A DNA stretch of 62,991 nucleotides, the filler included, from Octopus bimaculoides (taxonomy: Eukaryota): NCBI RefSeq assembly GCF_001194135.2. It is 9 parts of 7 records of this genome, joined end to end, with 100 filler letters (N's around TTAATTAATTAA, not from the genome) between each part and the next. Parts side by side here need not be neighbours in the genome. Positions count along the whole stretch, not along the records: positions 8,143 to 20,310 come from NC_068999.1; 8 more parts are not named here. One strand, given 5' to 3'. How positions within the stretch are numbered: the first letter of the stretch is position 1; each line of letters starts with the position of its first letter. The notes beneath the pieces are model-generated. The model was not told where the DNA came from, did not search any database, and saw only the letters and a program-made list of their open reading frames with translations. Below, piece after piece: positions 4,710 to 20,310 of this stretch. The position numbers and the translations under genes are program-made.

Positions 4710-5470
4710 AGCAACCCAAACCGATGAAAAGAGTACTAACAAATGCTAAACTATACACATCAACCACGAAACCAATAGTTAAAATATGTGGATGCCCAAA
4801 CTGTGGAACATGCCTCCAACCTACTGGAAGACTCGGAATTCCACTTCAAATAAAGAAAGAGGTTCACAATTAAGACCAGCTTTACTTGTGCATCCGACAA
4901 TTTAATTTATAACTTGTTATAACTTTGCGCAGAGGCGGTACCATAGCCAATGAGGGTTATCCGAGGCATGGTTATTGCTAGTTGAGAACTTGCTCAGGTT
5001 GTGGACAAGTATGTCACTTAAACAGAGAACCACACTGCATAAGGAACAGATCCGTTTCCCAAGAATAGAGAGATTCCTTTGAGTGAACACATAGAGAGAT
5101 GTGCCGGGAATCTCCAACTAAATTTCACGGTTTTCCCCATCTACCAGTGCAAGGAAACAATTTCTCTACCAGAACATTTAAATAAAGAAAATTTATTTAT
5201 CGAAAAATACAGAACACGCCTAAATATGAACGCATAACTAACTTTATATACTCTAATCCATGATCGCATGTCCACCACTGTACATATTTCATCTCACTAC
5301 TTTAGCTCATGTGTTCATATATATTAATTTATCCCACACAAAAGATGAGCAATTACTTCTGTCCCGAAGAATAGCAATCACTAATTACCTTCCCTTAGAT
5401 TTTTCTACTTGCTGATTCATTCACAAACTTTCATACAAGAACATGGGCTAAAAACTTAATAAGAAAATAC
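4710..5470 (+). mobile_element. Penelope-like element, GIY-YIG endonuclease region and 3' UTR (degraded)
   Basis: QPKPMKRVLTNAK..VKICGCPNCGTC..TSFTCASDNLIY..HKEQIRFP..IPLSEHIERCAG..IEKY..LNMNA* (stop 5235-5237). Same family as 21490-22360. Confidence 0.8.
4921..4991 (+). pseudogene. U4: U4 snRNA 5' fragment (nt 1-71), 3'-truncated retrocopy
   Basis: AACTTTGCGCAGAGGCGGTACCATAGCCAATGAGGGTTATCCGAGGCATGGTTATTGCTAGTTGAGAACTT matches human U4 nt 1-71 (recalled from memory) at about 60/71 positions. Compensatory changes in the 5' stem-loop (ACCAT/ATGGT versus ATCGT/GCGAT). No Sm site. Confidence 0.9.
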
Positions 5471-5792
5471 GAAATCACAATCATTTCAAGGTCGTGGTTA
5501 GCGAAATAATATTGTTTATATGTGTGTGAATTGAACCGATTGTTGGTTTTAAGGTGTGATCTAAAATAAAAATAAGATTTTCTTTATACATATTATTAGT
5601 TGTTAAATACTCTGAATTTCTTAAAATTCTACAAAAGTATTGTTGGATTAACCTGTCGTGCATGAGGATTTAACTGGGATTTGTATTCTACTTTAACTTT
5701 ATTTAAAGTAGAATACAAATTTAACTTTATTCCTTTATTTAAGTGTTTAATTGATATCTGCCAGGATTTTTAAAATCATATATTTCTCTCTC

Positions 5793-5847
<55 letters not shown>

Positions 5848-6499
5848 TAAAATGAAAGACGGAAGATAGAATATACCAGAATGTATTATTAATCACGACA
5901 ATTGTCTCGACACATCTAGCGTCGATCCCTCATGGTGGGACACTCAACAACTGGTTCAGGAGTATCCGGTGATGCAGATGTATCTCATCGGGTGATAAAT
6001 AAATACAACTTGTTAAAATAACAGTTCTGCAATGTAACTTCTCGTTTTGTAGAAAGAAAAGCAACCAGACGGAAATATCTTCATTTATATAGAAGATCAA
6101 AAATAAAATCACAGATGGCAAAAGGAGAAACGAACACACAATCCAGCGAGAAAAGTATTAAAAATAACCGTTAACAAATATAGATGTATAAACGCCCTCG
6201 GGCAAGCTGCATGACGCGAGTACACTCGCTTATACAGGGATCCACAAAAATGTGAGCATATGCACGCGTTAGATTTGGTGCACTCATGATCACAAAGCGA
6301 GTTAACTATCTACTTTGTGTTTGTAAGAATGGGAAGGTTAAAAGTAAACTTAAGTCATCTCTACCTTAAAGTAAATAAAATTATGTTAACGGTTACTCAA
6401 AATTCATTCCCACTGCATTGTGCGAAAGTACATTTATATGCGTGTAGGCATCTCGAGAGTCGTTCAGAAATTCTATTAATGATCTTCTTGTTAGTCCAT

Positions 6500-6680
6500 A
6501 GAATAGACAGGGATTCCTCGGAGCAGAGACGGCATCTCCTGAAAATTATACCGTATATTTTTCCTATGCCTTTTTAACTGTCTTTTGCTACTTCTGTCCA
6601 GAAATAATAAGGCGTCATCCCTATATAGACCTCCTGTTACTTCCGGAAAGGAAGACTGGATTAATAAAAGGATATATATA
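6500..6680 (-). mobile_element. Penelope-like RT fragment
   Basis: FPEVTGGLYRDDALLFLDRSSKRQL contains the GLYRDD catalytic motif of PLE (Neptune-type) RTs. Confidence 0.7.
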
Positions 6681-7079
6681 TATATATAGGTCAGTGATCC
6701 GAGCAGAATCATATGAACCCATTGCTATATCAAGTGCATTCTCCCTATCGAATCTACTCCATAATCTACCATCGAAATCTACTAGAGTGGATCGTACGGC
6801 AAGTTTAGTATCTATTTGGCGTCAGCACAAATCGGAACTTTTCATGCTAAAAATCACGACTTGATTAAGAACGATCGCGTTAATATATAAAGTATATCTA
6901 AAGTAACCGTGCTTTACCAGTAAATTACCAAGTGCAAACCATTCGTTTTAGTATTCATTATATATATAATTTAAATAATTTGGGAAAATGAATTTCTAAA
7001 TCAATCAGGTACAACCCTTCACCATTACATGCATCTGCAAATCGTACCTTGGGGTTTTATTTATCATATATTTATATAT

Positions 7080-7600
7080 TTATCTAGAAATATACAAAGT
7101 ATCTAATAAAGTCAGAATCCGGGGTACCCATGGTTGTCCCGGATTTTGCCCAGGTTACCGATCTTGTAGGTTTATATATCTTATCAGAACTAGAAATAGA
7201 ATTTACAAATATAGAGGGTGGTCTTTATAGGGATGACCTACTACTTATAACCAGGAACTGTACCAATAGGTCATTAAGAAGAAAATGTACAAGTTCTTTA
7301 AGAATAATGGCCTAGGGATATCTATAGAGAACGAGCATTATGCAGTAAATTATCTAGACGTCAACTTTAATCTAATCACTAATAAGATCCACTGAAAGAA
7401 AACCTAAAGTACATTAGTTCTTTAAATAACCATCCTAGATCAGTTAAAGAAGCTTTAATAGATAATATAGGCAAAAGAATATCTATGCTATCCTCAGATT
7501 ATGACACTTTTATTAAACATGCCCAATATTATAGTAAAGCATTAAAAGAAGCAGGATATAACTCTAATATAAAATTCTATAGTTATTAGGAACACATTAA
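7080..7600 (+). mobile_element. Penelope-like (Neptune-type) RT/thumb fragment
   Basis: GVPMVVPDFAQVTDLVGLYILSEL..GGLYRDDLLLI; VNYLDVNFNL; NNHPRSVK..IGKRISMLSSD..YSKALKEAGY. Frameshifted. Confidence 0.8.
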
Positions 7601-7606
7601 TAATAT

Positions 7607-7607
<1 letters not shown>

Positions 7608-7637
<30 letters not shown>

Positions 7638-7682
7638 AAGGAGAAGAAGAAGAAGAAGAAGAAGAAGAAGAAGAAGAAGAAG
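7608..7682. repeat. (AAG)n microsatellite
   Basis: Direct inspection. Confidence 0.95.
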
Positions 7683-7777
7683 ACTACACCGGGGATGTAA
7701 GACTACACCGAGGATGTGAAGACTACACCGGGGATGTGAAGACTACACCGGGGATGTGAAGACTACACCGGGGATGT
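7681..7777. repeat. Five tandem copies of a ~20-bp unit (GACTACACCGGGGATGTGAA)
   Basis: Direct inspection. The unit contains the terminal 13 nt of the adjacent repeat element. Confidence 0.95.
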
Positions 7778-8142: not shown

Positions 8143-8199
<57 letters not shown>

Positions 8200-8458
8200 G
8201 TGTATGTTGCAGTTTTTTATTTTTTTTTATTTTTATCTTCATTATTTACTGATCATGTAGAAATAGTTGTCTGTGTGAAATCCAATACATCAGCACGTGA
8301 TTCTTGCATGCAGAAGTGTCCAAAGACATCCAGCCAGAGTCTCCAGCATATGACTGGTTTATACCCTGGCCTTCACTGGCTCAGCATACAAAAAGCAAGT
8401 GTCAAGGTGCCAAGATGACACACGGTTTTATAAATATATATATATAATATATAGGCAG
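8200..8458 (-). other. SELENOT: SELENOT terminal non-coding exon (3' UTR)
   Basis: Acceptor ttttctttttttaattccag ends at 8459; the exon contains the SECIS; AATAAA signals at 8226-8231 and 8216-8221 (minus strand). The 3' end is approximate. Confidence 0.75.
8304..8392 (-). promoter_or_regulatory. SECIS element, type II, GUGA variant
   Basis: G-UGAA (8376-8372) / GGAU (8331-8328) non-Watson-Crick quartet; helix II GGCCAGGGU/ACUCUGGCU (9 bp); unpaired AAA; apical mini-helix CCAG/CUGG; helix I CCA/UGG plus UUGUAUGC/GCAUGCAA. Confidence 0.9.
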
Positions 8459-8671
8459 CTGGAATTAAAAAAGAAAATAAATATATTGATTTTGTTAAAT
8501 AAACAAATGATTGCTATGACAGTTTCAACATGAATTCAAAAGGTGTGGACAGGATGCAGGATTTTAAACTGTAGGTCACCCCTGATAAATAAGCAACCTT
8601 TTTTTATTTTTCAAAGGAATTCATGCCATAAGCATTGCATCTATTTCTTGAATTTTTTTTTTTCTGCAGAC

Positions 8672-9003
8672 AGGTGCATGTATAGCTGTGTACTAAGAAG
8701 CTTGCTTCCCAAGCACATGGTTCTGGGTTCAGTCCCACTGTATGGCACCTTCAGCAAGTGTCTTCTACTATAGCTTCAGGCCGACCAAAGCCTCATGAGT
8801 GGATTTGATAGTCAAAAAATGGAAGCCAGTTGTGTGTGTGTGTGTGTGTGTGTGTTGTGTTTGTCCCCCATTGCCACTTGACAACTGGTGTTGGTGTGTT
8901 CCCATAACTTAGCACTTTGGCAAAAGAGACCAATAGAATAAGTATTAGGCTTAAAAAATAAATTCCTGAGGTCGATTTGTTTGACTACAACTTTTTCAAG
9001 GGG
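8672..9003 (+). mobile_element. tRNA-derived SINE (CORE-like family, abundant in this window)
   Basis: Head ..GGTTCAGTCCCACTG..GGCACC..GCAAGTGTCTTCTACTATAGC, internal (TG)n and the family tail. Homologous to the copy at 40172-40590. Confidence 0.8.
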
Positions 9004-9922
9004 GTGTTCATATGTGGAAGATGCACAGGATCCATAAGAACTATAGAGATTCAGGAAATTGATTTTCTCAATTGCCCTAGTGGTTCATTAGAGGTAGTAG
9101 ATAATTTCTGCTGCCTCAGAGACCAAATTAGTAATGGGGGAGGATGCATGGAGAGAGTGATAGCCAGAATAAGAATAGAATAGAGGAAATTCAGAGAGCT
9201 GTTACCTCTGTTGGCTACGAAAGGTTTCTCTCTCCAAGTGAAAGGGAGACTGTCTGATGCAAGCATAGAGACAGCAATTCTAGATGGTAGTGACACATGG
9301 GCCCTGAACAAAGAGGAAAAGCGAAGGTTAGAAAGGAATGAGGCTAGTATGCTCTGCTGAAAGCATAATGGAAGCGTACATGTACAGCAGAGTACTAGTG
9401 TTTTGAGAGAGAAATTAAGCATAAGAGAAATTAATTGTTGTGTGTAAGGGAGAAGACTGCACTGGTTTGGTCATGTGATGTAGATGGATGCTGACAGCAT
9501 GAAGTGCTGATCTCTCAAAGTAGATGGAACATGTGGAAGTGGGAGACCCATGAAGACATGGGACGAAGTACTGGGAGAACGACCTCAGTACGCTGAACCT
9601 TCCAGGTGAGATGAAAAAGGACCTAGATGCCTGGTGCCTTGCTGTATTCAAGAAGAACTGTACTCTTCCACTGGTGGTAAGAATTGACCGGCAAGAGTCC
9701 TGTGCCAATGCCATGTAAAAGCGCCTGCGCAATGTCCTGTAAAAGCACCCATGCAATACCACATAAAAGCACTCAGCACACTCTGTAAAGTGGTTGGCAT
9801 TAGGAAGGGCATCCAGATGTAGAAACTAAGCTGTGTCAAATCAGACTGAAGTCTGGTGCAGCTCCCCAGACCTGGTCAAACCGTCCAACCCATACCAGAA
9901 GGACAATGGACGTTAAATGATT
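9004..9922 (+). mobile_element. RTE-clade LINE 3' end (RT C-terminus and tail), degraded
   Basis: LEVVDNFCCLRDQISNGGGC..ARIRI..KFRELLPLL..KGRL..DTWAL..RRLERNEASM..RRLHWFGHV..GRPMKTW; tail ends GGACGTTAAATGA. Confidence 0.85.
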
Positions 9923-10565
9923 ATCGTTTAACGTCCACTTTCCATGCGTCAGGATCCAGTCTGACTTGGCATGGTTTTTCTATGGCTGGATGCACTCCCT
10001 AATGCCAACCACTCTGAGAGTGTAATGGGTGTTTTTATATGTCAGCGGTACGGGTGCCATTTGCACGACACAGGTATCTTCTAGGATTGCAATTTTGCTC
10101 GGCTTGATGGGTCTTCTTCTCAAGCACAACATAATACCAAAGGTCCTGGTCATTGCCTCCGTGAGGTCCAACACTCAAAAGGAGCTCAGCTACTTTGCTT
10201 CTGTGAGGCCCAACATTCAAATGTTGATTTTTTTTACGTGTCACCAGCATGGGTGCACTTGGCTTGACGAGTCCTCTTAAGCAGAGCACATCACCAAAGG
10301 TCTTGGTTACTAGTCATTGCCTCTGTGAGGTTCAAAGTTCGAAGGTCATGCTTCACCACCTCGTCCCATGTCTTCCTGGGTCTGCCTACCTCTACCACAG
10401 GTTCCCTCCACACTTAGAGATCAGCACTTCTTTACACAACTCTCCTCGTCCATACGCATCACAACTATAGACAGTGCAGTAGTCTCTCCTGCACACAGCA
10501 TCTGATTCCTCTTATGCTTAAACTTTCTCTCAAGATGCTTACACTCAGTCGAACAAACACACTGA
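9923..10565 (-). mobile_element. RTE-clade LINE 3' end, tail-to-tail with the preceding copy
   Basis: Starts TCGTTTAACGTCC (reverse tail), has the GGATG..CCCTAATGCCAACCACTCTG block, then reverse RT 3' sequence (ccatgtcttcctgggtctgcc = GRPRKTW). Confidence 0.8.
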
Positions 10566-10671
10566 CACTGCATATCCAAAGAATGAATTCACAGCTCCTA
10601 ACAAAGGACAGATTAAAATAATAAGAGATGGACATAAGTCTAGTGAGTTGTTTCTTACCTTGAGATAGAAA

Positions 10672-10778
10672 TTAGGCGAGATCATCCTTATGAAGTCTCA
10701 TATGATTATCTATAATCTGGAACATTTCGCTTGGAGATGGAATACGTCCATTTTCAAGTTTGGACCAAACTGGAACAT
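10672..10778 (-). CDS. SELENOT: Selenoprotein T, last coding exon
   Basis: Acceptor ttatctttctag; (G)AT completes Asp; DVPVWSKLENGRIPSPSEMFQIIDNHMRLHKDDLA* (TAA 10674-10672), like human DVPVWSKLESGHLPS. The exon continues to a donor AAG|GTAAGA at 10659. Confidence 0.95.
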
Positions 10779-11018
10779 CTAGAAAGATAAACAAAAATAA
10801 AATTAAATGTGGTGATTTAATTAAAATACCTTACTGCTGACATCACTTACTTTCAATGTCTGGATAAAAGAATAAAAATACAAAATAAAGACCAGAAAAC
10901 AATAACCTAGAAAGTAAACCTGTTTTGTAAGTCTTATTCTACAAACTTTAAATAGCAGTTCAAGAGCAGCTTCAGAAACATATCAACACAGTTTATACAC
11001 TAGGTATATAGCAAACTA

Positions 11019-13590
11019 CCATATTTGGTGGCCTATAAGATGCATGAGGGTATAGGACGTGAGGCCCAACATTCAAATGTTGATTTTTTTTACGTGTCAC
11101 CAGCATGGGTGCACTTGGCTTGACGAGTCCTCTTAAGCAGAGCACATCACCAAAGGTTTTGGTTACTAGTCATTGCCTCTGTGAGGTTCAAAGTTCGAAG
11201 GCTATACTTCTGTAAAATAAATTACCACTAAAATAATGTTTTAATTCTTCCACTTACCAGTATAACTTTATGTTATTACCGGTCATTATAAGCAATTTAT
11301 TGCATCCACATTCAATATAAATATACCATAGGTGATTGTTCACCAATAGATGGCAGCATATGTTTTGTAAACATACATATCGTAGGTGATTGGCAACACC
11401 CTGCCATCCACAAACCCTCCCCTTCTCCCTCTGATGTTACTATGTTCTTTTAGAAATGCTGGTTTTTTCCTTAATCTTTATGTTAATTATTTAGTGTTAG
11501 TTACAAGAACTTTTACTAATGTTAATAATAATAAATGATACCATAGTTCATGGTATATTCCCCCCCAAAATATGGTAAACATAAGTTGTTATTTGTCTTG
11601 CAATTTAACAAATCCAAGTTATACCATAAGACAATTTGTTTTAAAATATATGATAACAAAAAAACTATTACATGGGAAAATGTTTAATGTTCCATAAAAT
11701 CTCTTATCTCCAAAGTTAGGGAAAAAATAACAAAAAAACAAGCTATGATTAGTAATGTACGGTATGTATGAACAACAATTGGGGGGGGGGGGGAAACTAG
11801 AACACAAGCCTATAAAAAAATTATAAATAGCAAGTCATCATTATACCATAATTGAACATAAAACAATAGAGAGAAAAAAAAAAGAAAAAAAAACTAGGTC
11901 ATCAAAATTTTATTCATCTTCAAAACCAGAAAATTTATCATCTTCACTACTACTATCATCATCTTCAAATAATGCGTCATCTGTTCCACCAAGGGTCATT
12001 GCTAATGCCGCACTTTCTAAAAGATTTCACAACAATTTCTGGTCTGATGTCATCTCAAGCTTGCTTCACCCATTCACAGACTTGTGCAATGCTGGGTCTT
12101 TTCATCCTTCCTGTGGGTGTGACATTGTGGTCTGGCATTGTCATCCATGTGTTCCATTGCTCCTTCATGTTCTGCTTGAATGGCCTATTTAAAGAGACAT
12201 CTAGAAGTTGTAATTGACTTGTTAGCCCACCAGGAATAACCGCTATCTCTGTCTTCAATTCTGCCACTTCTTTTTTTAATGGCTTCAGTCCTATGCACTC
12301 AAAACTGATCCCAAACCAGAAGAGAGGGTTTTCGCAATAGTTCACCAGGACGTCTTGCCCATACATCTTGTAGCTATAAATGCATTCTGGCTTCATCCAT
12401 CCAGCCTTTGAGATGAATGTAAACATGCACACCTTTTGATATTTTTTCTTTAGGGATAGTTTTTTTGCTTAAAATTCAGAGAAAGAGGCAGTTTTGTGCC
12501 ATCAGTGCAACACGAGAGAACAACCATATAATGGATCTTCTCTTGGCCTGTAGTTTTTACTGAAATTGTCTTGGATCCCTTGATACCCACAGTTCTATTT
12601 GATGGAACATCAAACGTTAGTGGGATTGAGATTTTTTTCGAACAGCTATAACAAATTTATGAAACTTTACTATTTTATCATCATAGTCACCTGGCATTCT
12701 CTGTGCAATTGATGTTTTTGTAAGCATTCACAAACCTTCCCGTTTCATAAATCGATAACACCATCCTTCTGTTCCAATAAAGTTCTGAATCCCCTTTTCA
12801 TTCGCTAACCATTTGTCTTGTTCCTTATCATTTTCGTATAAACGACTGTGCCTGAAATTCTCACATCTACTACCCACATCTTTATTTCCTTCTCAATTTC
12901 AGGCCAGTATGAAGCTAACGAAGGTTATAGTTTCCTTTCTTTGCTGGGAGTAGTTTATTTTCTTACAGCTGCCAGAAAGTACCATTTTTTTCAGTAGGAG
13001 GAGGGCCAAAATACCATGTTGCTGCTACTGTTTCCATGCTCTTTAGCATAGTCTATTACTTGAAGCTTGTACCGAATAGTGTAGCTTAATCTCTTTCCTC
13101 CTGTGGCCATATTCATATAAGTAAAATCCAGAAAATAAAAAAATCTCTGATCCGTAACGACCTGTGTCTCATGAACAACTGAATGAAGATTTTGTGTTAT
13201 CCTTCATATAGCGAACGTCAGCAGCGTTGCCAGGTAGCTTCAGCGTTATCAAGTGACGATTCAACACATTTTGTAAACAGAATACATTTTGTAAATAAAC
13301 ATGTAAAACGTTTAAGATATCGGGTAATAAAATATCAAAAATAACAACATATATAATAATTAAAATATTAGCAATAGTAACCGTGATGATGATAAATAAT
13401 AATAATCTAATGTGTTTTTGAAAAAATAGACTATTACAATATCATAAAGAGTTTAAGCTAGGCTACATCTACATGACCTCTGATGTATAATTTTGGCTAA
13501 CAGTCACAAGTTTTGAGCCTATATTGAGTGCATTGGACACAAGGGGATTTTTGGGGTAAAAAAAGGTGTCTTATAGGCCATAAAATACAG
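11019..13590 (-). mobile_element. pogo-family (POGK-like) DNA transposon, full-length but degraded, in a SELENOT intron
   Basis: TIRs CCATATTTGGTGGCCTATAAGATGCA and (reverse complement) CTGTATTTTATGGCCTATAAGACACC, with TA on both flanks. Transposase from ATG 13110: YKLQVIDYAKEHGN..WPEIEKEIKMWV..AVIPGGLTSQLQLLDVSLNRPFK..TPTGRMKRPSIAQVCEWVK..KSFRKCGISN. Confidence 0.9.
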
Positions 13591-13747
13591 TAAATATACA
13601 AATTCGCCAACACTGTGACTTTGGAGTACAGGTAAGTTCACCACCATCAATTCACTGCAGGGAGAATCATTCACAGTGAAGAAAGTTTACCAAGAAAATA
13701 TACCCATAGTATCTCAATATTAATAGTTGAAGACTATTTTATTGAAG

Positions 13748-13782
<35 letters not shown>
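13748..13782. repeat. Poly(A)35 tract
   Basis: Direct inspection. Confidence 0.9.
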
Positions 13783-13783
<1 letters not shown>

Positions 13784-14831
13784 CCAGTAAAATTGATGAC
13801 AGTAAACTTATCGAACATGGTGACTTTGAGCTACTGAGAGATTCATGTTGTGATACCAGAAAAGATTATAAATACCAATAAATCCCACCCAAGTCTCTTC
13901 AAAATGGCAGGTTATATCAAAAAACATATTCACAGGCACAGGCATGGCAGTGTTGCTAAGTTTACTTTGCAGTCACATGGTTTACAGCAGAGTACTTTGA
14001 GCAAATGTCTTCTATTATAGCCCCAGGTTAACTAATACCTAGCACATGAATTTGCTAGACAGAAACTACACAGTAACCTGTCGTGTGTGTGTGTGTGTGT
14101 GTATGCGTCCACCACAGTATGACATGGCGTTGGTTTGTTTACATTCCTCATAACTGAGTAGATCAGCAAGAAACTGATAAGAATAAGTAGCAAACCTAAA
14201 AATAAATATTGGGGTCAATTTGTTCAATGTGGAGCCCCAGTATGGCCACAATCCCGCGACTGAAACAAATAAAAACGTATAGATACACTTTGCTTGATAA
14301 GAAAAAGAAATAGCAATTGTATGAGCCAAAGAGGATGCCTCTATGCAATGACTCAACATGTTAGAAATAGTTGTCGAATTTCCTTCAAATTGTATCCTAC
14401 CATCTTTAAAAAGACACAGGGGGAAATGTATTCTTAGATAAGAAATGCTTTATATAAAAGCAAGTCATAGCTGGAATGCATGCCTTAGATTTTAGGTCTA
14501 ATGAATCAGGCTGGCCCAGCGATAACAAGTAACTCTAAAGTAAGAGTAGAATATTTTTTTGTTCAGACAGGCAAATTATAACAGAGTTATCTACCCTTAC
14601 ATCGATAAAATATCTGCAACATTTTGATTGTCAGAATTAAAATTGTTAGAAAAAATGCTTTCCAATATTTTTTCCATTTCTCTATCGAGGTCAACTCTGC
14701 CTTTCATGTGTTTGGAGTCGATAAAATAAGTGTCAATCAAGTACTAGTATGGATGCTATCGACTAATTCCTTCCCCTCAAAACTAATGACTTTGTGTCTC
14801 AATCCAAAACCATTAATCTTTTATGCCTTAA

Positions 14832-15131
14832 TCCCTTTTAGTATTCAGATTACCCTGTCAAATGTAATGCTTATTTATTCACATTGGAATTTATCATGCA
14901 TTAACTTGTAGCTACGTGATTTTAATATCATCATCATAATTTAACGTCTATGTTTCATGTTGGCATGAATGCAATTGTTTATTTTCAGAATGATATTGTA
15001 GGCTACATGTGAGACTAGATTTGGCCAGTTTGAACATGGAACAGGTAGAACATTGTGCCGGATCTGGCCAGTTTGAACATAAAACAAGAGGAATGTTTGG
15101 GCTGGATAAAGCTGGTTTAAATGCTAAAGGG
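14832..15131. mobile_element. piggyBac-type MITE (TTAA-flanked) with an RTE tail inserted inside
   Basis: TTAA-tCCCTTTTAGTATT at the left and AATGCTAAAGGG-TTAA at the right. Confidence 0.65.
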
Positions 15132-15744
15132 TTAAGTTAAAAGAGACTGGTAGGAGAAAAGATTTTGATAGCTAAAGACTGAAGACTTGGTATGAATGTT
15201 TGTAACAGGGTAGAATCTATTAAAGGCAGCTAAGAGCCAACCAACAGGCGGTGTTAAACTGATACATTAAGTCTATCACACTGGAACAAGTAGAGTTCAT
15301 CTGAAGATTTCTACACAATTTCTGACAAATTATTTTCACTCACCAGATTTGTGTTAACATGAAGTTGTGGTAGACAACTCTTGACCAAGATGCTACACAT
15401 GTGACTACTTTTCTAAATAGATTTGATATTTACCCTATAAATGTGAGGGGTAAGTAGTCTAATAAAAAGTCAACTGACATAAATATGGTTTACATCATTT
15501 TAACGCCTACTTTTCCATGCTCGTATGGGTTAGACAGAATTTGTGTAGGAAAATTTTCCAAGGCTGGATGCCCTTCCTATCACCAATCCTCACTCGTTTC
15601 CAAGCAAGGTTCCCTCATGGCTGGACATGCTTTTACAGAAGACTGGAAAACGATGGATATCACTTGTATAATGGTGATACTTATTTACAACTATCACATG
15701 ATGTCATAAGGAAACACTAACATGCATGCACACACCATCATTAT

Positions 15745-16100
15745 CATTATTTAGTGTCCATTTTCTATGCTGGCATTGACTAGATGGTTTGACAGGAACT
15801 TGTAAGCCAGATAGTTGTACTAGGCTCCAGTCCGGTTTGGTTTCTATGGCTGGATGCCCTGCCTAATTCCGATCACTTCACAGAGTGTACCAGGTGCCTT
15901 TTATGTATCACCAGCAATGGCCACAACTATGATGTCACTTAGCATTACATGACTTCTCAAGCACAGCAAATCATCAAAAGTCACTTGTCACTGCCTCCAG
16001 GTAACTCAACATCCAAAGATCAAATTTCACCACCTCACCCCATGTCTTCCTGAGTCTACCACTTCCACAGGTTTCCTCCACAGTAAGAGATCAGCACTTC
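15745..16100 (-). mobile_element. RTE-family 3' end, degraded
   Basis: Reverse tail block GGCTGGATGCCCTGCCTAA..CAGAGTGTACCAGGTGCC and reverse GRxRKTW (ccatgtcttcctgagtct). Confidence 0.7.
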
Positions 16101-16344
16101 TTTGGCAGGCTTTTTTCAGTTTCCTTCTACTAGGTCCACTCACAAGATTTTGGTCAAGTTCAGGGTTATAGTAGAAGACACTTGTCCAAGGTACCACACA
16201 GTGGGACTGAATATGAAATCACATAGTTAGAAAGCAAACACCTTAAATCACACAGCCACACTTGCACAATAACAAAGTACAAAGTACACAAGTTCAATTT
16301 CACCCGAGAGAGAGAGAGAGAGAGAGAAACATGCAGAGGCTTAC

Positions 16345-16432
16345 CATTGAATGTTACTTCAAAAGCTCCGGTAGAAATCATATGCCCTTCAAGAGCATTA
16401 CTTAGAAAGAAGACCATCATACAAGAATAAAT
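16345..16432 (-). CDS. SELENOT: Selenoprotein T, internal coding exon
   Basis: Acceptor ttttatcaatttcag, donor G|GTAAGC; 88 nt; IYSCMMVFFLSNALEGHMISTGAFEVTFN, like human VYACMMVFFLSNMIENQCMSTGAFEITLN. Splice phases fit both neighbouring exons. Confidence 0.96.
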
Positions 16433-16555
16433 CTGAAATTGATAAAAACACAAATCACAATGAATTGAATCATCACCAAAAACAAAATACTTCAACAAAA
16501 AGAATTTTGAAGATTTTCACCCATTGATCATCTCTATTTGAAGCAGAAGATGGTG

Positions 16556-16775
16556 AGAGTTAACTCTTTTGTTATCATATTTCTATTAAAATACGCTGCC
16601 TTTATTTCAATTAATTTGGAAACTAATTTAGAATTTAGTAAAATAATTTTGTGATTATTCAGCTGGTATTTGGAACATAAATTAACTTGAAATTTTGATA
16701 GTAGGCTTAAATTCAGATCATTTTAAAACAGGAAGCTAATATCATAGGACCAAGAATGGTCTCAGGCACATGACC
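16556..16775. mobile_element. TTAA-started MITE fragment (piggyBac-like); a matching right-end fragment lies at ~18205-18260
   Basis: Begins TTAACTCTTT. Shares the ATCATAG(G/A)ACCA block with 18205-18260, which ends AAAGAGTTAA. Confidence 0.5.
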
Positions 16776-17386
16776 AGCCACCTCTAATGAGAGAGATAAT
16801 TAAAGGAACAGAAATAAGACAGTACACCTGGGGGCCAGAGGCCAGAACATGGTGTTTTCGTAAGTGATTTTTCTGCTTGTTCACACCTGGGACTAGATAC
16901 CATAACCAACACCATGGGATAAGCAGCTTCTATACGGCTGCTCAATATGCTAGAAATAGGAGTCAAATCTTCAAATCATGCTATTGTCTTCAAAAAGGAG
17001 CAATGAGTGACATAGTCCTGGATTTCTTGTATAGCAATAAGAAGGGATGGCCACTGTTGGAATGTTCTAGATCCATTTGATCGGAGCTGGCCTGGGGGTT
17101 AAATACCAACACCAACACCATGGAGATATAACCAATGAGGGAATGTCTACACGATAGCTTGATTTGCTAGAAATAACAACCAAATCTCCTTTGAATCAGA
17201 ACATAAAGGGCACAAGGGATTTTTAGTATTCCTTACATTGCTTGAAAATTCGTTGGAATGGTCATGCCTGGAACACTGATTACAGATCTATTTGTTCAGG
17301 ACTAATCCAGAGCAAAACAAAACACTACACTACGAGAACATCACCACCACCACCACCACCACCACCAAGAAAAAAAAATTACTTAC

Positions 17387-17624
17387 CTTATTTGAAGTGG
17401 CCCAAGTGAAAACACTAGGAGTTTGCATATTGAGATAATGGAAAGGATTAAACTCTGATAAAATGATACCTATTAAGGACAACTTGAATATACTGAGAAA
17501 CTGTGCTATAACTGCCTTGATAGTTGGAGGTGGAAAGTTCTCGCCTTCAACTTGGAGATTAGGAAATCTTTGATGAATTGCTTGTGCATATTGCTCAAAC
17601 ACTTTTCGGTAACCTCAGGAATAA
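17387..17624 (-). CDS. SELENOT: Selenoprotein T, Sec-containing exon (TGA at 17617-17615)
   Basis: Acceptor ctcttctttctttcag; T TAT TCC TGA GGT TAC CGA = (C)YSUGYRKVFEQYAQAIHQRFPNLQVEGENFPPPTIKAVIAQFLSIFKLSLIGIILSEFNPFHYLNMQTPSVFTWATSNK; donor AAG|GTAAGT. Compare human CVSUGYRRVFEEY..IEGENY. Confidence 0.97.
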
Positions 17625-18597
17625 CTGAAAGAAAGAAGAGAAATAGGAATTTATAAAATGTTAACCACAGAGAATTTCATAACATATAATAACTAAATAC
17701 AAGGTAATTACCAAATTACCACAGTCTGAGTATGTGGCACTGCAAGCTGATTTTGGTGTATTTACACCGTTTGTCTGCACCAAGAAATTTTCTCCATAAC
17801 AAAACACAGTGAATGGCTTTCTTACTGGTTTGAATATCACCCCCAAGCATATTTAAACAGGTAATAACTTTGTACTTATATGCATCACTGCACATGACTG
17901 CTCAATAAAAATATAAGTACAAAATACAGACAACAAATGTAAACTTACATAGAAAAACACTGAGTGTGTGTGTGTGTGCGTGCACACACAGATTAAAGCT
18001 CTCAACACTTAGCCTAAAGTCATCACTATTACATATTCCCCCTATCAGGCAAGGGAGTATTTCGGTCTTGTGACTTACAAGGTAATCACAATAATGCTGG
18101 CACCATGAAAAAAAAGCACTCAGTACAGTCTTAAAGCGGTTGAAGTTAGGAAGAACATGGAGCTGCAGAAGCCATGTCGAAAGTAAGACACTGGAGCAAG
18201 ACCAAGTTTGTATCATAGAACCAGGGGTGATTTCAGACAGTTTAGTGTCGAAAGAGTTAAAAGAAAAATAAACGCAATTTCACAATGCTATAACCTACAA
18301 ATCTAAATGACACCATCAAAACTAGATATGCCTTTTTTCTTTACCAGGGATCCTAGGTGTGCTAAGTAAAAGGGTTGGCATCAGGAAGGGCAACTGGCCA
18401 TAAAATAATGCTTCAAAAGGTTTTGTGCAGCTTATGGCAGGTATGGAAATGTAGACAATGTAAAGAAATATGTAACAATTATTTTTAAGTTAAAAGAACA
18501 GATTCAACTGAACATTGAAACAAATCCAAGAAATTAGTGTGGATTCAATTTCTGAAATGGATTTAAGAATTTCCTAATTTTACAGTTTTTTAGCATT

Positions 18598-18977
18598 TAT
18601 CTTTTGTTTCATTCAGTGGACTGCAGCCATGCTAGGCCCAGCCTTGAAGGATTTAGTCAAGCAAATCAACCCCAGGACTAATTTTTTAAAGCTTGGTACT
18701 TATTCTATCTGTCCTGGAATCACTAAGTTATGGGGACATAAATCAACACCATTGTCAAATGGTGGTGAGGGACAAACACAGAGATATATTTACACAAACA
18801 CCCACACACATACAAACAGGCTTCTTTCAGTTTCCATTTACCAAATCCACCCACAAGGCTTTGGTTGGCCTGGAGCTATAGTAGAAGACACTTGCCCAAG
18901 GTATCACACAGTGGGACTGAACCCAAAACGATGTAGTTGGAAAGCAAACTTCTTACCACACAGCTACACTTGTGCCT
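18598..18977 (-). mobile_element. tRNA-derived SINE (CORE-like family), complete but CpG-decayed
   Basis: Reverse complement of the family at 40172-40590. Confidence 0.8.
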
Positions 18978-19059
18978 ATGTGGACTTTTGTTTTGGAACA
19001 ACCACTGTATTTTAAACATATGCTAGCATAATTTGTTGCATAGAGAAACATAGATTCTG

Positions 19060-20030
19060 TTCAAAGTAAGAAAGAAATACCCATACATGATGGTGCTTTA
19101 GACCAAAATACCTTTATAATTGCTTTTTTTCTATCATTATCAACAGAACAAATTAGGGATTCTTGATTCTCCTCATTAACAACACTTGATGGTAAACTCC
19201 TGATTTGAAAAATTTTGGGTGAATTCAAAATCTTTGTCACAATCTGATCATCACTATTTTTACGCTTGAGACTATGTAATGGATTTTCAATGGATATTTT
19301 TCTGGTGCTCAAAAAGAAGTCAGCATTTTCATCACGCTCTCAAAAGAGGGTCAGGTTTGAAAGCTTATGCAGTAGCAGATGCAGCAAGTGCACCATAAAT
19401 TACAAACTGGCACCAAATGTCAGAGATACAACGATGGTTTCAACTATTTATTTCTATTGTGGCATCTGAAATTTTGCTTTATTAGTTGTATGGGAGATAT
19501 ACTGTTGAATGATAGAAGGTACAAAAATATTTCTACAGTTTAAAACTAACTCAGATCCATGGGGACAGGCTCTAAAGTTATCAAATAGGTTTTTTTATTT
19601 TCTTGAAGTCAAATTGCAAATCCCAATTCTCAAGTAAACCAATTTTTAAAAAGTTCTTTATCCAAACACACATTCTTTTGGGCTTAGTAAAAGATCAGCA
19701 AATGCATTATTCATTTCAAGGCTGTATGACAATGAAACTTAACAATCACTACATGTTTTATCTTGTGTTGGGCAGATGCATTTGACAAGTAAGAACTGTC
19801 AGCCATTTATTTTGCTTGAATTCTCTGGCAGGTGCTTCATTACAAACTGCCAATGTTTTCACTAGTAAACATTTTTAGTAAAGGCCAGTTTCACTGGCAT
19901 TGTATATTCAATCAGCTCTAAGATTATGTTCCTAAACAAGTTAATCAGATATTGGACTGAATGCTTTTAGTCACTGTTTTCACCAGTAATGTCCAGTTTT
20001 CACATTTTGGTTGATGTAAACTATTCCTAT
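19060..20030 (-). mobile_element. Tigger/pogo transposase remnant, heavily degraded
   Basis: Motifs pieced across frameshifts: YNASETGL (=YNADETGL), KTLA..E, LTVLTC..NAS..HKIK, AQKNVCLDKELFKNWF, LFDN. Confidence 0.65.
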
Positions 20031-20057
20031 CTGCTATTTTATAATTAGGCCAGAACA

Positions 20058-20310
20058 TCATCATCATCATCATCATCATCGTTTAACGTCCGCTTTCCAT
20101 GCTAGCATGGGTTGGACGATTTGACTGAGGACTGGTGAAACCGGATGGCAACACCAGGCTCCAGTCTGATTTGGCAGAGTTTCTACAGCTGGATGCCCTT
20201 CCTAACGCCAACCACTCAGAGAGTGTAGTGGGTGCTTTTACGTGTCACCCGCACGAAAACGGCCACGCTCGAAATGGTGTCTTTTATGTGCCACCCGCAC
20301 AAGCCAGTCC
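20058..20310 (-). mobile_element. Young RTE-tailed repeat (CpGs intact), cut by gap
   Basis: (CAT)n tail then GTTTAACGTCCGCTTTCCATGCTAGC..GGATGCCCTTCCTAACGCCAACCACTC. Closely similar to 35874-36150. Confidence 0.8.

What the first reader, a model, noticed from the sequence alone, without database searches (positions are those of the whole stretch)
8200..17624. Hidden selenoprotein gene: SELENOT with an in-frame UGA that the ORF track treats as a stop
Seen: three phase-compatible exons give CYSUGYRKVFEQY...KDDLA*, with TGA at the CxxU redox position and a SECIS about 520 nt downstream in the spliced mRNA. The ORF track starts this exon after the TGA. Established: SelT is an ER thioredoxin-like selenoprotein. 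Standard pipelines often truncate such genes or mis-splice around the UGA, so the existing model may be wrong (inference).
Basis: partly seen in the sequence, partly recalled or inferred. Interest (0 to 1): 0.75.

Follow-up and report, generated by a model that had tools for sequence, protein, structure and literature searches.

The report
Selenoprotein T gene with its SECIS
This is an ordinary mollusc copy of the well-known selenoprotein T gene, in which an in-frame TGA is read as selenocysteine with the help of a hairpin in the 3' untranslated region; simple gene finders cut such genes short, but the biology is not new.

Summary
On the minus strand, three exons with canonical AG/GT borders (17624-17387, 16432-16345, 10778-10672) join in frame. 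They give (C)YS-TGA-GYRKVFEQY...KDDLA-stop, with the TGA at 17617-17615.

The product is a clear selenoprotein T: Pfam Rdx E 4e-18 and 286 SelT homologues. It is 83% identical to unnamed transcripts, 70% to a cluster that includes oyster SelT, and 65% to the limpet protein. All 12 related transcripts fetched carry TGA at the same codon. The Lottia genome has the same intron position, which splits the Cys codon TG|T.

A type II SECIS lies at 8394-8301. A covariance model built only from relatives' SelT SECIS elements finds it as the single significant hit in the piece (41 bits, E about 2e-7; next best 11.6 bits).

Corrections:
- Exon 1 (signal peptide and the first two bases of the Cys codon) lies outside the piece.
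- The 3'UTR intron (10658-8459) is inferred.
- The SECIS reads GUGA where most relatives read AUGA, a known minor variant.

The claim that the existing gene model is wrong could not be tested, though it fits how such genes are treated in databases. This is a known gene and a known mechanism, so interest is low.

The parts
17387..17624 (-). SELENOT coding exon (exon 2 of the gene, first in the piece), phase 2 start. It encodes (C)YSUGYRKVF...WATSNK.
   Evidence: Canonical splice sites and translation; tblastn to P0001 E 1e-35; blastn to transcripts L001-L003.
17615..17617 (-). In-frame TGA, the selenocysteine codon of the CxxU redox motif.
   Evidence: TGA sits at the aligned codon in all 12 related transcripts. 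Lottia genomic DNA has T GTT TCC TGA GGG behind the same acceptor.
16345..16432 (-). SELENOT coding exon 3 (IYSCMMVFFLSNALEGHMISTGAFEVTFN + 1 base).
   Evidence: the exon borders match those in Lottia.
10659..10778 (-). SELENOT exon 4: the last 107 coding nt (DVPVWSKLENGR...KDDLA, TAA at 10674-10672) plus 13 nt of 3'UTR, up to an inferred donor CAAG|gtaaga.
   Evidence: The donor is inferred from consensus and from the stop-to-SECIS spacing in relatives.
8459..10658 (-). Inferred 3'UTR intron (GT 10658-10657, AG 8460-8459), filled with interspersed repeats.
   Evidence: Splice consensus. The spliced stop-to-SECIS distance is 95 nt, against about 80 nt in L001/L002 transcripts. Repeats are listed. 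Not shown by RNA from this species.
8301..8394 (-). SECIS element, type II.
- Helix I: 8394-8384 pairs with 8311-8301.
- GUGA: 8376-8373.
- Helix II: GGCCAGGGU pairs with ACUCUGGCU.
- Apical AAA: 8360-8358.
- Mini-stem: CCAG pairs with CUGG.
- 3' side of the quartet: GGAU, with its GA at 8330-8329.
   Evidence: Relatives-only covariance model R1: 41 bits, E 1.7e-7, sole significant hit. Rfam SECIS_1: 18.6 bits at the same place. blastn to the L002 SECIS: E 1e-7.
8216..8231 (-). Two AATAAA hexamers, candidate polyadenylation signals about 70-85 nt past the SECIS (inference only).
17625..20310 (-). Part of intron 1. Exon 1 (start codon, signal peptide, ...TG of the Cys codon) is not in the piece.
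   Evidence: The N-terminal 55 residues of relatives give no tblastn hit here.

Best explanation
The piece holds the 3' four-fifths of a functional mollusc (probably cephalopod) orthologue of selenoprotein T (SELENOT).

The mRNA is spliced from at least five exons. The UGA lies seven bases into exon 2. It is decoded as selenocysteine, not stop, because a type II SECIS hairpin in the last exon recruits the Sec insertion machinery: SECIS-binding protein 2, the Sec-specific elongation factor and Sec-tRNA (established mechanism). The product is a thioredoxin-like (Rdx-fold) protein with a CxxU redox centre.

Shown here: the exons, the frame, the TGA, orthology, purifying selection and the SECIS.

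Inferred: the Cys of CxxU (a split codon), the 3'UTR intron, the poly(A) site, the ER location, and actual Sec insertion.
For: Protein identity:
- Pfam Rdx PF10262, E 4e-18.
- 286 homologues, those that carry names being named selenoprotein T. Identity is 83% to P0001, 70% to the cluster that contains Magallana gigas SelT, 65% to Lottia and 55% to the hominid protein.

The TGA:
- It sits at the aligned codon in 12 of 12 related transcripts. The gene caller printed W there, or split the protein into 55-aa and 137-aa halves.

Gene structure:
- All three intron positions are shared with Lottia, including the TG|T split of the Cys codon.

Selection:
- pN is 0.09 against pS of about 0.75 versus L001/L002, which indicates strong purifying selection.

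SECIS:
- The model built without the window gives 41 bits, E 1.7e-7; the next hit scores 11.6 bits.
- The same model finds the Lottia SECIS (35.7 bits) as its only significant hit in 13 kb, a positive control.
- The core UGAA/GGAU fits the published consensus UGAN/KGAW (PMC3753652).
- The 111-nt MFE fold already gives the SECIS architecture, z = -2.5.
- Helix II and the mini-stem are kept across three species, with one-sided changes that preserve pairing.
Against: - There is no RNA or protein evidence from this species.
- Exon 1 is absent from the piece, so the start codon and the Cys are unseen.
- Rfam SECIS_1 scores only 18.6 bits (gathering score 35) and found nothing when the whole piece was searched. 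The SECIS elements of the related SelT mRNAs also score only 19-27 bits or are missed.
- The base before the quartet is G (8376), where 9 of 10 relatives have A.
- In the MAFFT alignment, helix I of the window is one column out of register. The tool therefore counts several helix I pairs as broken.
Confidence: 0.93

Rival explanations
1. A decaying or non-functional SelT copy: the TGA now acts as a stop, and the A-to-G change before the SECIS quartet has weakened or killed the element.
For: The window reads GUGA where L001, L002 and seven other relatives read AUGA. Rfam scores it lowest of the set, at 18.6 bits.
Against: The reading frame is intact and all six splice sites are canonical. pN/pS is about 0.1. 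Every other SECIS feature is kept. GUGA_AA elements are the majority form in sponges and some algae, including sponge SelT (PMC3473315). One SelT relative here, L011, also has GUGA.
Confidence: 0.03
2. The TGA is a sequencing or assembly error for TGT/TGC, and the gene is a Cys-containing SelT homologue as in insects (the CG3887 type).
For: Cys forms exist; P0069 has CYSCGY. A single base would make the difference.
Against: All 12 closest transcripts carry TGA. A conserved SECIS would have no purpose in a Cys form.
Confidence: 0.02
3. The 3'UTR is not spliced: the mRNA runs straight from the stop at 10672 through 2.3 kb of repeats to the SECIS.
For: There is no RNA evidence for the junction. 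SECIS elements work at distances of kilobases. In Lottia the SECIS lies about 390 nt downstream of the stop in genomic DNA.
Against: The donor CAAG|gtaaga and the acceptor tttttaattccag|C are both good. Splicing restores the roughly 80-95 nt spacing and the AAG-CTG join seen in L001/L002 transcripts. The intervening DNA is made of repeats. This rival changes only the transcript model, not the identity of the gene.
Confidence: 0.2

Closest known systems
Human/vertebrate SELENOT (selenoprotein T)
   Same: Rdx/thioredoxin-like fold. CxxU with Sec near the N-terminus (CVSU in human from my own knowledge; the database copy P0081 is garbled at exactly that motif, IWVSSGY; CYSU here). The hydrophobic middle segment and the C-terminal VPVWSKLE block are shared. 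Identity is 55% over 98% of the query. The SECIS is in the 3'UTR.
   Different: The SECIS has G, not A, before the quartet. The C-terminal tail is shorter. The introns are long and full of repeats.
Lottia gigantea SelT (LOTGIDRAFT_120388, deposited as 'partial')
   Same: 65% identity. All three intron positions are the same, including the split Cys codon. TGA lies seven bases into exon 2. The same model detects a SECIS downstream of the stop.
   Different: The Lottia gene is compact (about 2.3 kb from start to SECIS) and has AUGA. Its deposited model omits exon 1 and the CxxU motif.
Insect CG3887-type SelT homologues
   Same: The same family and length, about 55% identity (P0069).
   Different: They have Cys (TGT/TGC) in place of Sec and need no SECIS. 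The window has TGA plus a SECIS.
GUGA_AA SECIS elements of sponges and green algae
   Same: G instead of A directly before the UGA of the quartet, with AA in the apical loop (PMC3473315).
   Different: In those organisms it is the majority form across the whole selenoproteome. Here it is one element whose nearest relatives have AUGA.

Membership tests
Selenoprotein T (SELENOT, Rdx family) | Rdx / thioredoxin-like domain | tested here: met
   PF10262, 65.7 bits against a cut-off of 22.6, E 4e-18.
Selenoprotein T (SELENOT, Rdx family) | Best matches over the full length are SelT rather than SelW, SelH or SelV | tested here: met
   286 hits, with 90-100% query coverage among the best 120 listed apart from a few shorter fragments (80-89%). 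The named ones are all selenoprotein T or its CG3887 homologue. The cluster of P0003 contains Magallana gigas SelT.
Selenoprotein T (SELENOT, Rdx family) | CxxU motif with Sec encoded by an in-frame UGA | tested here: met
   xYS-TGA-GY at 17624-17609, with the TGA aligned to the TGA of 12 relatives. The Cys is only partly visible (third base T) and is inferred from the Lottia exon 1 end, TG|gt.
Selenoprotein T (SELENOT, Rdx family) | N-terminal signal peptide / ER targeting | not testable with these tools
   Exon 1 lies outside the piece. Relatives do have a hydrophobic N-terminus.
Selenoprotein T (SELENOT, Rdx family) | Selenocysteine is actually inserted | not testable with these tools
   This needs 75Se labelling, mass spectrometry or ribosome profiling.
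Eukaryotic SECIS element | Kink-turn core UGAN / KGAW | tested here: met
   UGAA at 8375-8372 and GGAU at 8331-8328. The consensus is from PMC3753652.
Eukaryotic SECIS element | Helix II of about 9-12 bp, then unpaired AA(A) in the apical loop. Type II has a further mini-stem. | tested here: met
   The 9-bp helix GGCCAGGGU/ACUCUGGCU, AAA at 8360-8358, and the mini-stem CCAG/CUGG. The MFE and constrained folds agree, and the consensus with L001/L002 keeps them.
Eukaryotic SECIS element | A directly before the quartet (AUGA) | tested here: not met
   G at 8376 (GUGA). This is a frequent but not obligatory feature. GUGA_AA is documented in sponges and algae (PMC3473315) and occurs in relative L011.
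Eukaryotic SECIS element | Reaches the curated Rfam SECIS_1 score | tested here: not met
   18.6 bits against a gathering score of 35. The SECIS elements of eight related SelT mRNAs also fail, scoring 19-27 bits or being missed, so this test is uninformative here. The family-specific model R1 gives 41 bits.
Eukaryotic SECIS element | Located in the 3'UTR of the same transcript, on the same strand | tested here: inconclusive
   It is on the same strand and downstream of the stop. It is homologous to the SECIS that sits about 80 nt after the stop in L001/L002 transcripts. No transcript from this species is available.

The most novel reading that the evidence does not exclude
The A-to-G change before the SECIS quartet is fixed in this lineage and marks a shift in SECIS usage. 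That could mean lower or differently regulated Sec insertion into SelT, or a selenoproteome-wide drift towards GUGA as in sponges and green algae, which would imply an altered preference of the SECIS-binding protein.
Probability: 0.08. Interest if true: 0.3.

Novelty: already known. Interest (0 to 1): 0.12.

Why it matters
The value is mainly practical. If the genome's annotation truncates, mis-splices or omits this gene, the model should be corrected: exon 1 added, the TGA flagged as Sec, and the SECIS exon included. The case shows again how ORF-based tracks and generic pipelines lose N-terminal-Sec selenoproteins. The same loss appears in the deposited Lottia, Lymnaea and Lingula models and in the split 55-aa and 137-aa calls in transcript assemblies. 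It adds nothing new about selenoprotein biology. SelT as a selenoprotein in molluscs was reported in 2012 (PMC3473315).

Tried and rejected
- Rfam, E up to 1, over the whole piece: no SECIS, only (TA)n artefacts called mir-297. Restricted to 221 nt, it gave a sub-threshold SECIS_1 hit.
- MFE folding of an 83-nt slice did not give the SECIS shape. The 111-nt slice that includes helix I did.
- My own crude pattern-plus-pairing SECIS scan found 4 RTGA-type candidates against about 1 expected by chance. Pattern alone is therefore not decisive. The others lie in introns or on the wrong strand.
- Exon 1 was looked for with five full-length relatives and is not in 17625-20310.
- A conserved stem-loop just downstream of the UGA (a Sec redefinition element) was looked for in seven aligned sequences. 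No pairs were predicted.
- No tRNA genes were found.
- The MAFFT alignment of the three closest SECIS elements puts helix I of the window one column out of register, so I did not use its pair counts as covariation evidence for helix I.
- The species could not be identified. The nearest transcripts carry no names.
Full report
**Observation**

I read the piece on the minus strand and located the claimed exons.

- Exon A is 17624-17387 (238 nt), behind a polypyrimidine tract and CAG, and ends AAG|gtaagt.
- Exon B is 16432-16345 (88 nt).
- Exon C is 10778-10672 (107 nt, ending in TAA at 10674-10672).

All borders are canonical. With two bases supplied from an upstream exon, the three join to 435 nt. 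They translate to CYS*GYRKVFEQYAQAIHQRFPNLQVEGENFPPPTIKAVIAQFLSIFKLSLIGIILSEFNPFHYLNMQTPSVFTWATSNKIYSCMMVFFLSNALEGHMISTGAFEVTFNDVPVWSKLENGRIPSPSEMFQIIDNHMRLHKDDLA*. The single internal stop is the TGA at 17617-17615.

The mechanical ORF list does start this exon after the TGA. Its ORF begins at GTG 17602 and runs through the donor into the intron to 17330.

**Identity**

With Cys in place of the stop, the product matches Pfam Rdx (PF10262) at 65.7 bits, E 4e-18. A search of 5.8 billion proteins returned 286 hits at E <= 1e-5. Those that carry names are selenoprotein T or its insect CG3887 homologue.

| Match | Identity |
|---|---|
| P0001 (unnamed transcript-derived protein) | 83% |
| P0002 (unnamed transcript-derived protein) | 82% |
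| P0003 (its cluster includes Magallana gigas SelT) | 70% |
| Lottia gigantea | 65% |
| Hominid SELENOT | 55% |

The source is therefore a mollusc. The gap between 83% and 70% suggests a lineage whose close relatives are poorly represented. From the look of the repeats I suspect a cephalopod, but that rests on memory and was not tested.

No protein from this locus itself is in the database.

tblastn of five full-length relatives hits exactly the three exons and nothing else. Their first 55 or so residues find no match in 17625-20310. Exon 1 therefore lies beyond the edge of the piece.

**Is the TGA a Sec codon?**

I fetched twelve related transcript contigs (L001-L012). Every one has TGA at the aligned codon, in the context TG[TC] NNN TCN TGA GGN TA. 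The collection's gene caller either printed W there or produced halves. Cluster members of 55 aa end at the UGA, and members of 137 aa start after it.

The Lottia genomic locus (L013) shows the same exon start, ttcag|T GTT TCC TGA GGG. Its exon 1 ends ...TTT CTG TAC TG|gtacgt. The split Cys codon and all three intron positions are thus conserved. That justifies reading the window's lone T as the end of a Cys codon.

Against L001 and L002, the nonsynonymous difference is 0.09 per site and the synonymous one about 0.75, which is saturated. The frame is under strong purifying selection.

**SECIS**

In L001 and L002 a SECIS sits about 80 nt after the stop: ATGA, a 10-bp helix, AAA, and a CCAGA/UCUGG mini-stem. 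blastn aligns that element to window 8375-8326 at 82% identity, E 1e-7.

Rfam SECIS_1 hits 8384-8316 at only 18.6 bits (gathering score 35) when 221 nt are searched. It found nothing over the whole piece. The same Rfam model gives the SECIS elements of the related SelT mRNAs only 19-27 bits, and it misses L001, L002 and L012. It is therefore a poor yardstick here.

I built a covariance model (R1) from ten relatives' SelT SECIS elements, leaving out the window.

- With filters off, over 12,168 nt on both strands, it gives one significant hit: 8384-8321 (-), 41 bits, E 1.7e-7. The next best is 11.6 bits, E 0.57.
- As a positive control, it finds one element in the 13-kb Lottia locus (35.7 bits), about 390 nt downstream of the SelT stop.

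The anatomy comes from the folds:

| Feature | Sequence | Coordinates |
|---|---|---|
| Helix I | UUUUUGUAUGC / GCAUGCAAGAA | 8394-8384 / 8311-8301 |
| Base before the quartet plus quartet, 5' side | G, then UGAA | 8376, then 8375-8372 |
| Helix II | GGCCAGGGU / ACUCUGGCU | not tabulated |
| Apical loop | AAA | 8360-8358 |
| Mini-stem | CCAG / CUGG | not tabulated |
| Quartet, 3' side | GGAU | 8331-8328 |

The core fits the published UGAN/KGAW consensus (PMC3753652). The 111-nt MFE fold already has this architecture, with z = -2.5.

The three-species consensus keeps helix II and the mini-stem, with one-sided changes that preserve pairing. Helix I is formed in each species' own fold, from different sequences. 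MAFFT places the window one column out of register, so I do not claim formal covariation for helix I.

**The one oddity**

The base before the quartet is G (GUGA), where nine of ten relatives have A. L011 also has GUGA. GUGA_AA elements are documented as the main form in sponges (including sponge SelT) and in some green algae, and as rare in other invertebrates (PMC3473315). I read it as a tolerated minor variant. Whether it lowers efficiency is untested.

**Transcript model**

Thirteen bases after the stop there is a good donor, CAAG|gtaaga, with GT at 10658-10657. A good acceptor, tttttaattccag|C, lies just before 8458.

Splicing them puts the SECIS 95 nt after the stop, compared with about 80 nt in L001/L002. 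It also recreates the AAG-CTG join seen in L002.

The 2.2 kb in between is made of repeats. This intron is inferred. An unspliced 2.3-kb UTR would still carry the SECIS. Two AATAAA hexamers at 8231-8216 may mark the 3' end.

**Mechanism**

By the established eukaryotic pathway, the SECIS kink-turn binds SECIS-binding protein 2. That protein brings the Sec-specific elongation factor with Sec-tRNA to the ribosome at the UGA, so the CxxU redox centre of a thioredoxin-like protein is made. Nothing here departs from that.

I also looked for a conserved stem-loop just after the UGA (a Sec redefinition element) and found none.

**The annotation claim**

I could not see the genome's annotation. The claim is plausible:

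- This locus has no product in the database.
- The deposited Lottia model starts on the very codon after the TGA. The Lymnaea model starts at the same residue, and the Lingula model one residue later.
- A 2026 survey found only 11% (Ensembl) and 5% (GenBank) of vertebrate selenoprotein genes well annotated. 'Downstream' starts were typical of N-terminal-Sec families, including T (PMC12822975).

**Verdict**

The gene is a routine orthologue of a known selenoprotein, and SelT was already reported as a selenoprotein in a mollusc in 2012 (PMC3473315). Its value is as an annotation fix, not as a discovery.

Noticed in passing
window 11880-13130 (-): A decayed pogo/Tigger-type DNA transposon sits in the intron between exons B and C. 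Its reading frames are broken by many stops and shifts, but they still match Pfam DDE_1 (E 3e-7) and, weakly, the Tc5 transposase HTH.
   Followed up: partly
window 10203-10354 and 11059-11210: Two direct copies of a 152-nt repeat, 97% identical and 856 nt apart, bracket coding exon C (10778-10672). One is in the upstream intron and one in the inferred 3'UTR intron. They may be young copies of the same interspersed element. Recombination between them would delete the last coding exon.
   Followed up: no
window 8667-8855, 16167-16252, 18794-18982: Three copies of a SINE-like repeat (73-81% alike, in both orientations) are scattered through the introns. ARAGORN sees no tRNA-like gene in them.
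   Followed up: partly
window 9381-9569 (+), 10386-10555, 15980-16103: A second repeat family. The + strand translation near 9400-9650 reads like the C-terminal end of a LINE reverse-transcriptase ORF (...RLHWFGHVM.MD...GRPMKTWDEV...), but it gave no Pfam hit.
   Followed up: partly
window 8143-8205; 17340-17372; 20060-20085; 13745-13795: Microsatellites are present: (TA)n at the piece edge (scored by Rfam as a spurious mir-297), (GGT)n directly after the exon A donor, (GAT)n, and a run of about 45 T.
   Followed up: no
L011 866-931: A SelT transcript from a marine metatranscriptome (62% protein identity) also has GUGA rather than AUGA in its SECIS. The variant therefore recurs within the SelT family.
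   Followed up: partly
L013 (Lottia gigantea KB202014.1) 5452-7768: The deposited 'partial' model LOTGIDRAFT_120388 starts at the codon after the Sec TGA. Exon 1 (5452-5625 by tblastn match, ending TG|gt) and a SECIS (7707-7768) are present but unannotated. A possible donor (cag|gtacta) lies 22 nt after its stop.
   Followed up: partly
L004, L006 3'UTRs; L013 7325-7337: The motif ACCAATCAG recurs near the SECIS or the stop in several mollusc SelT 3'UTRs. Its meaning is unknown, and it was not seen in the window.
   Followed up: no
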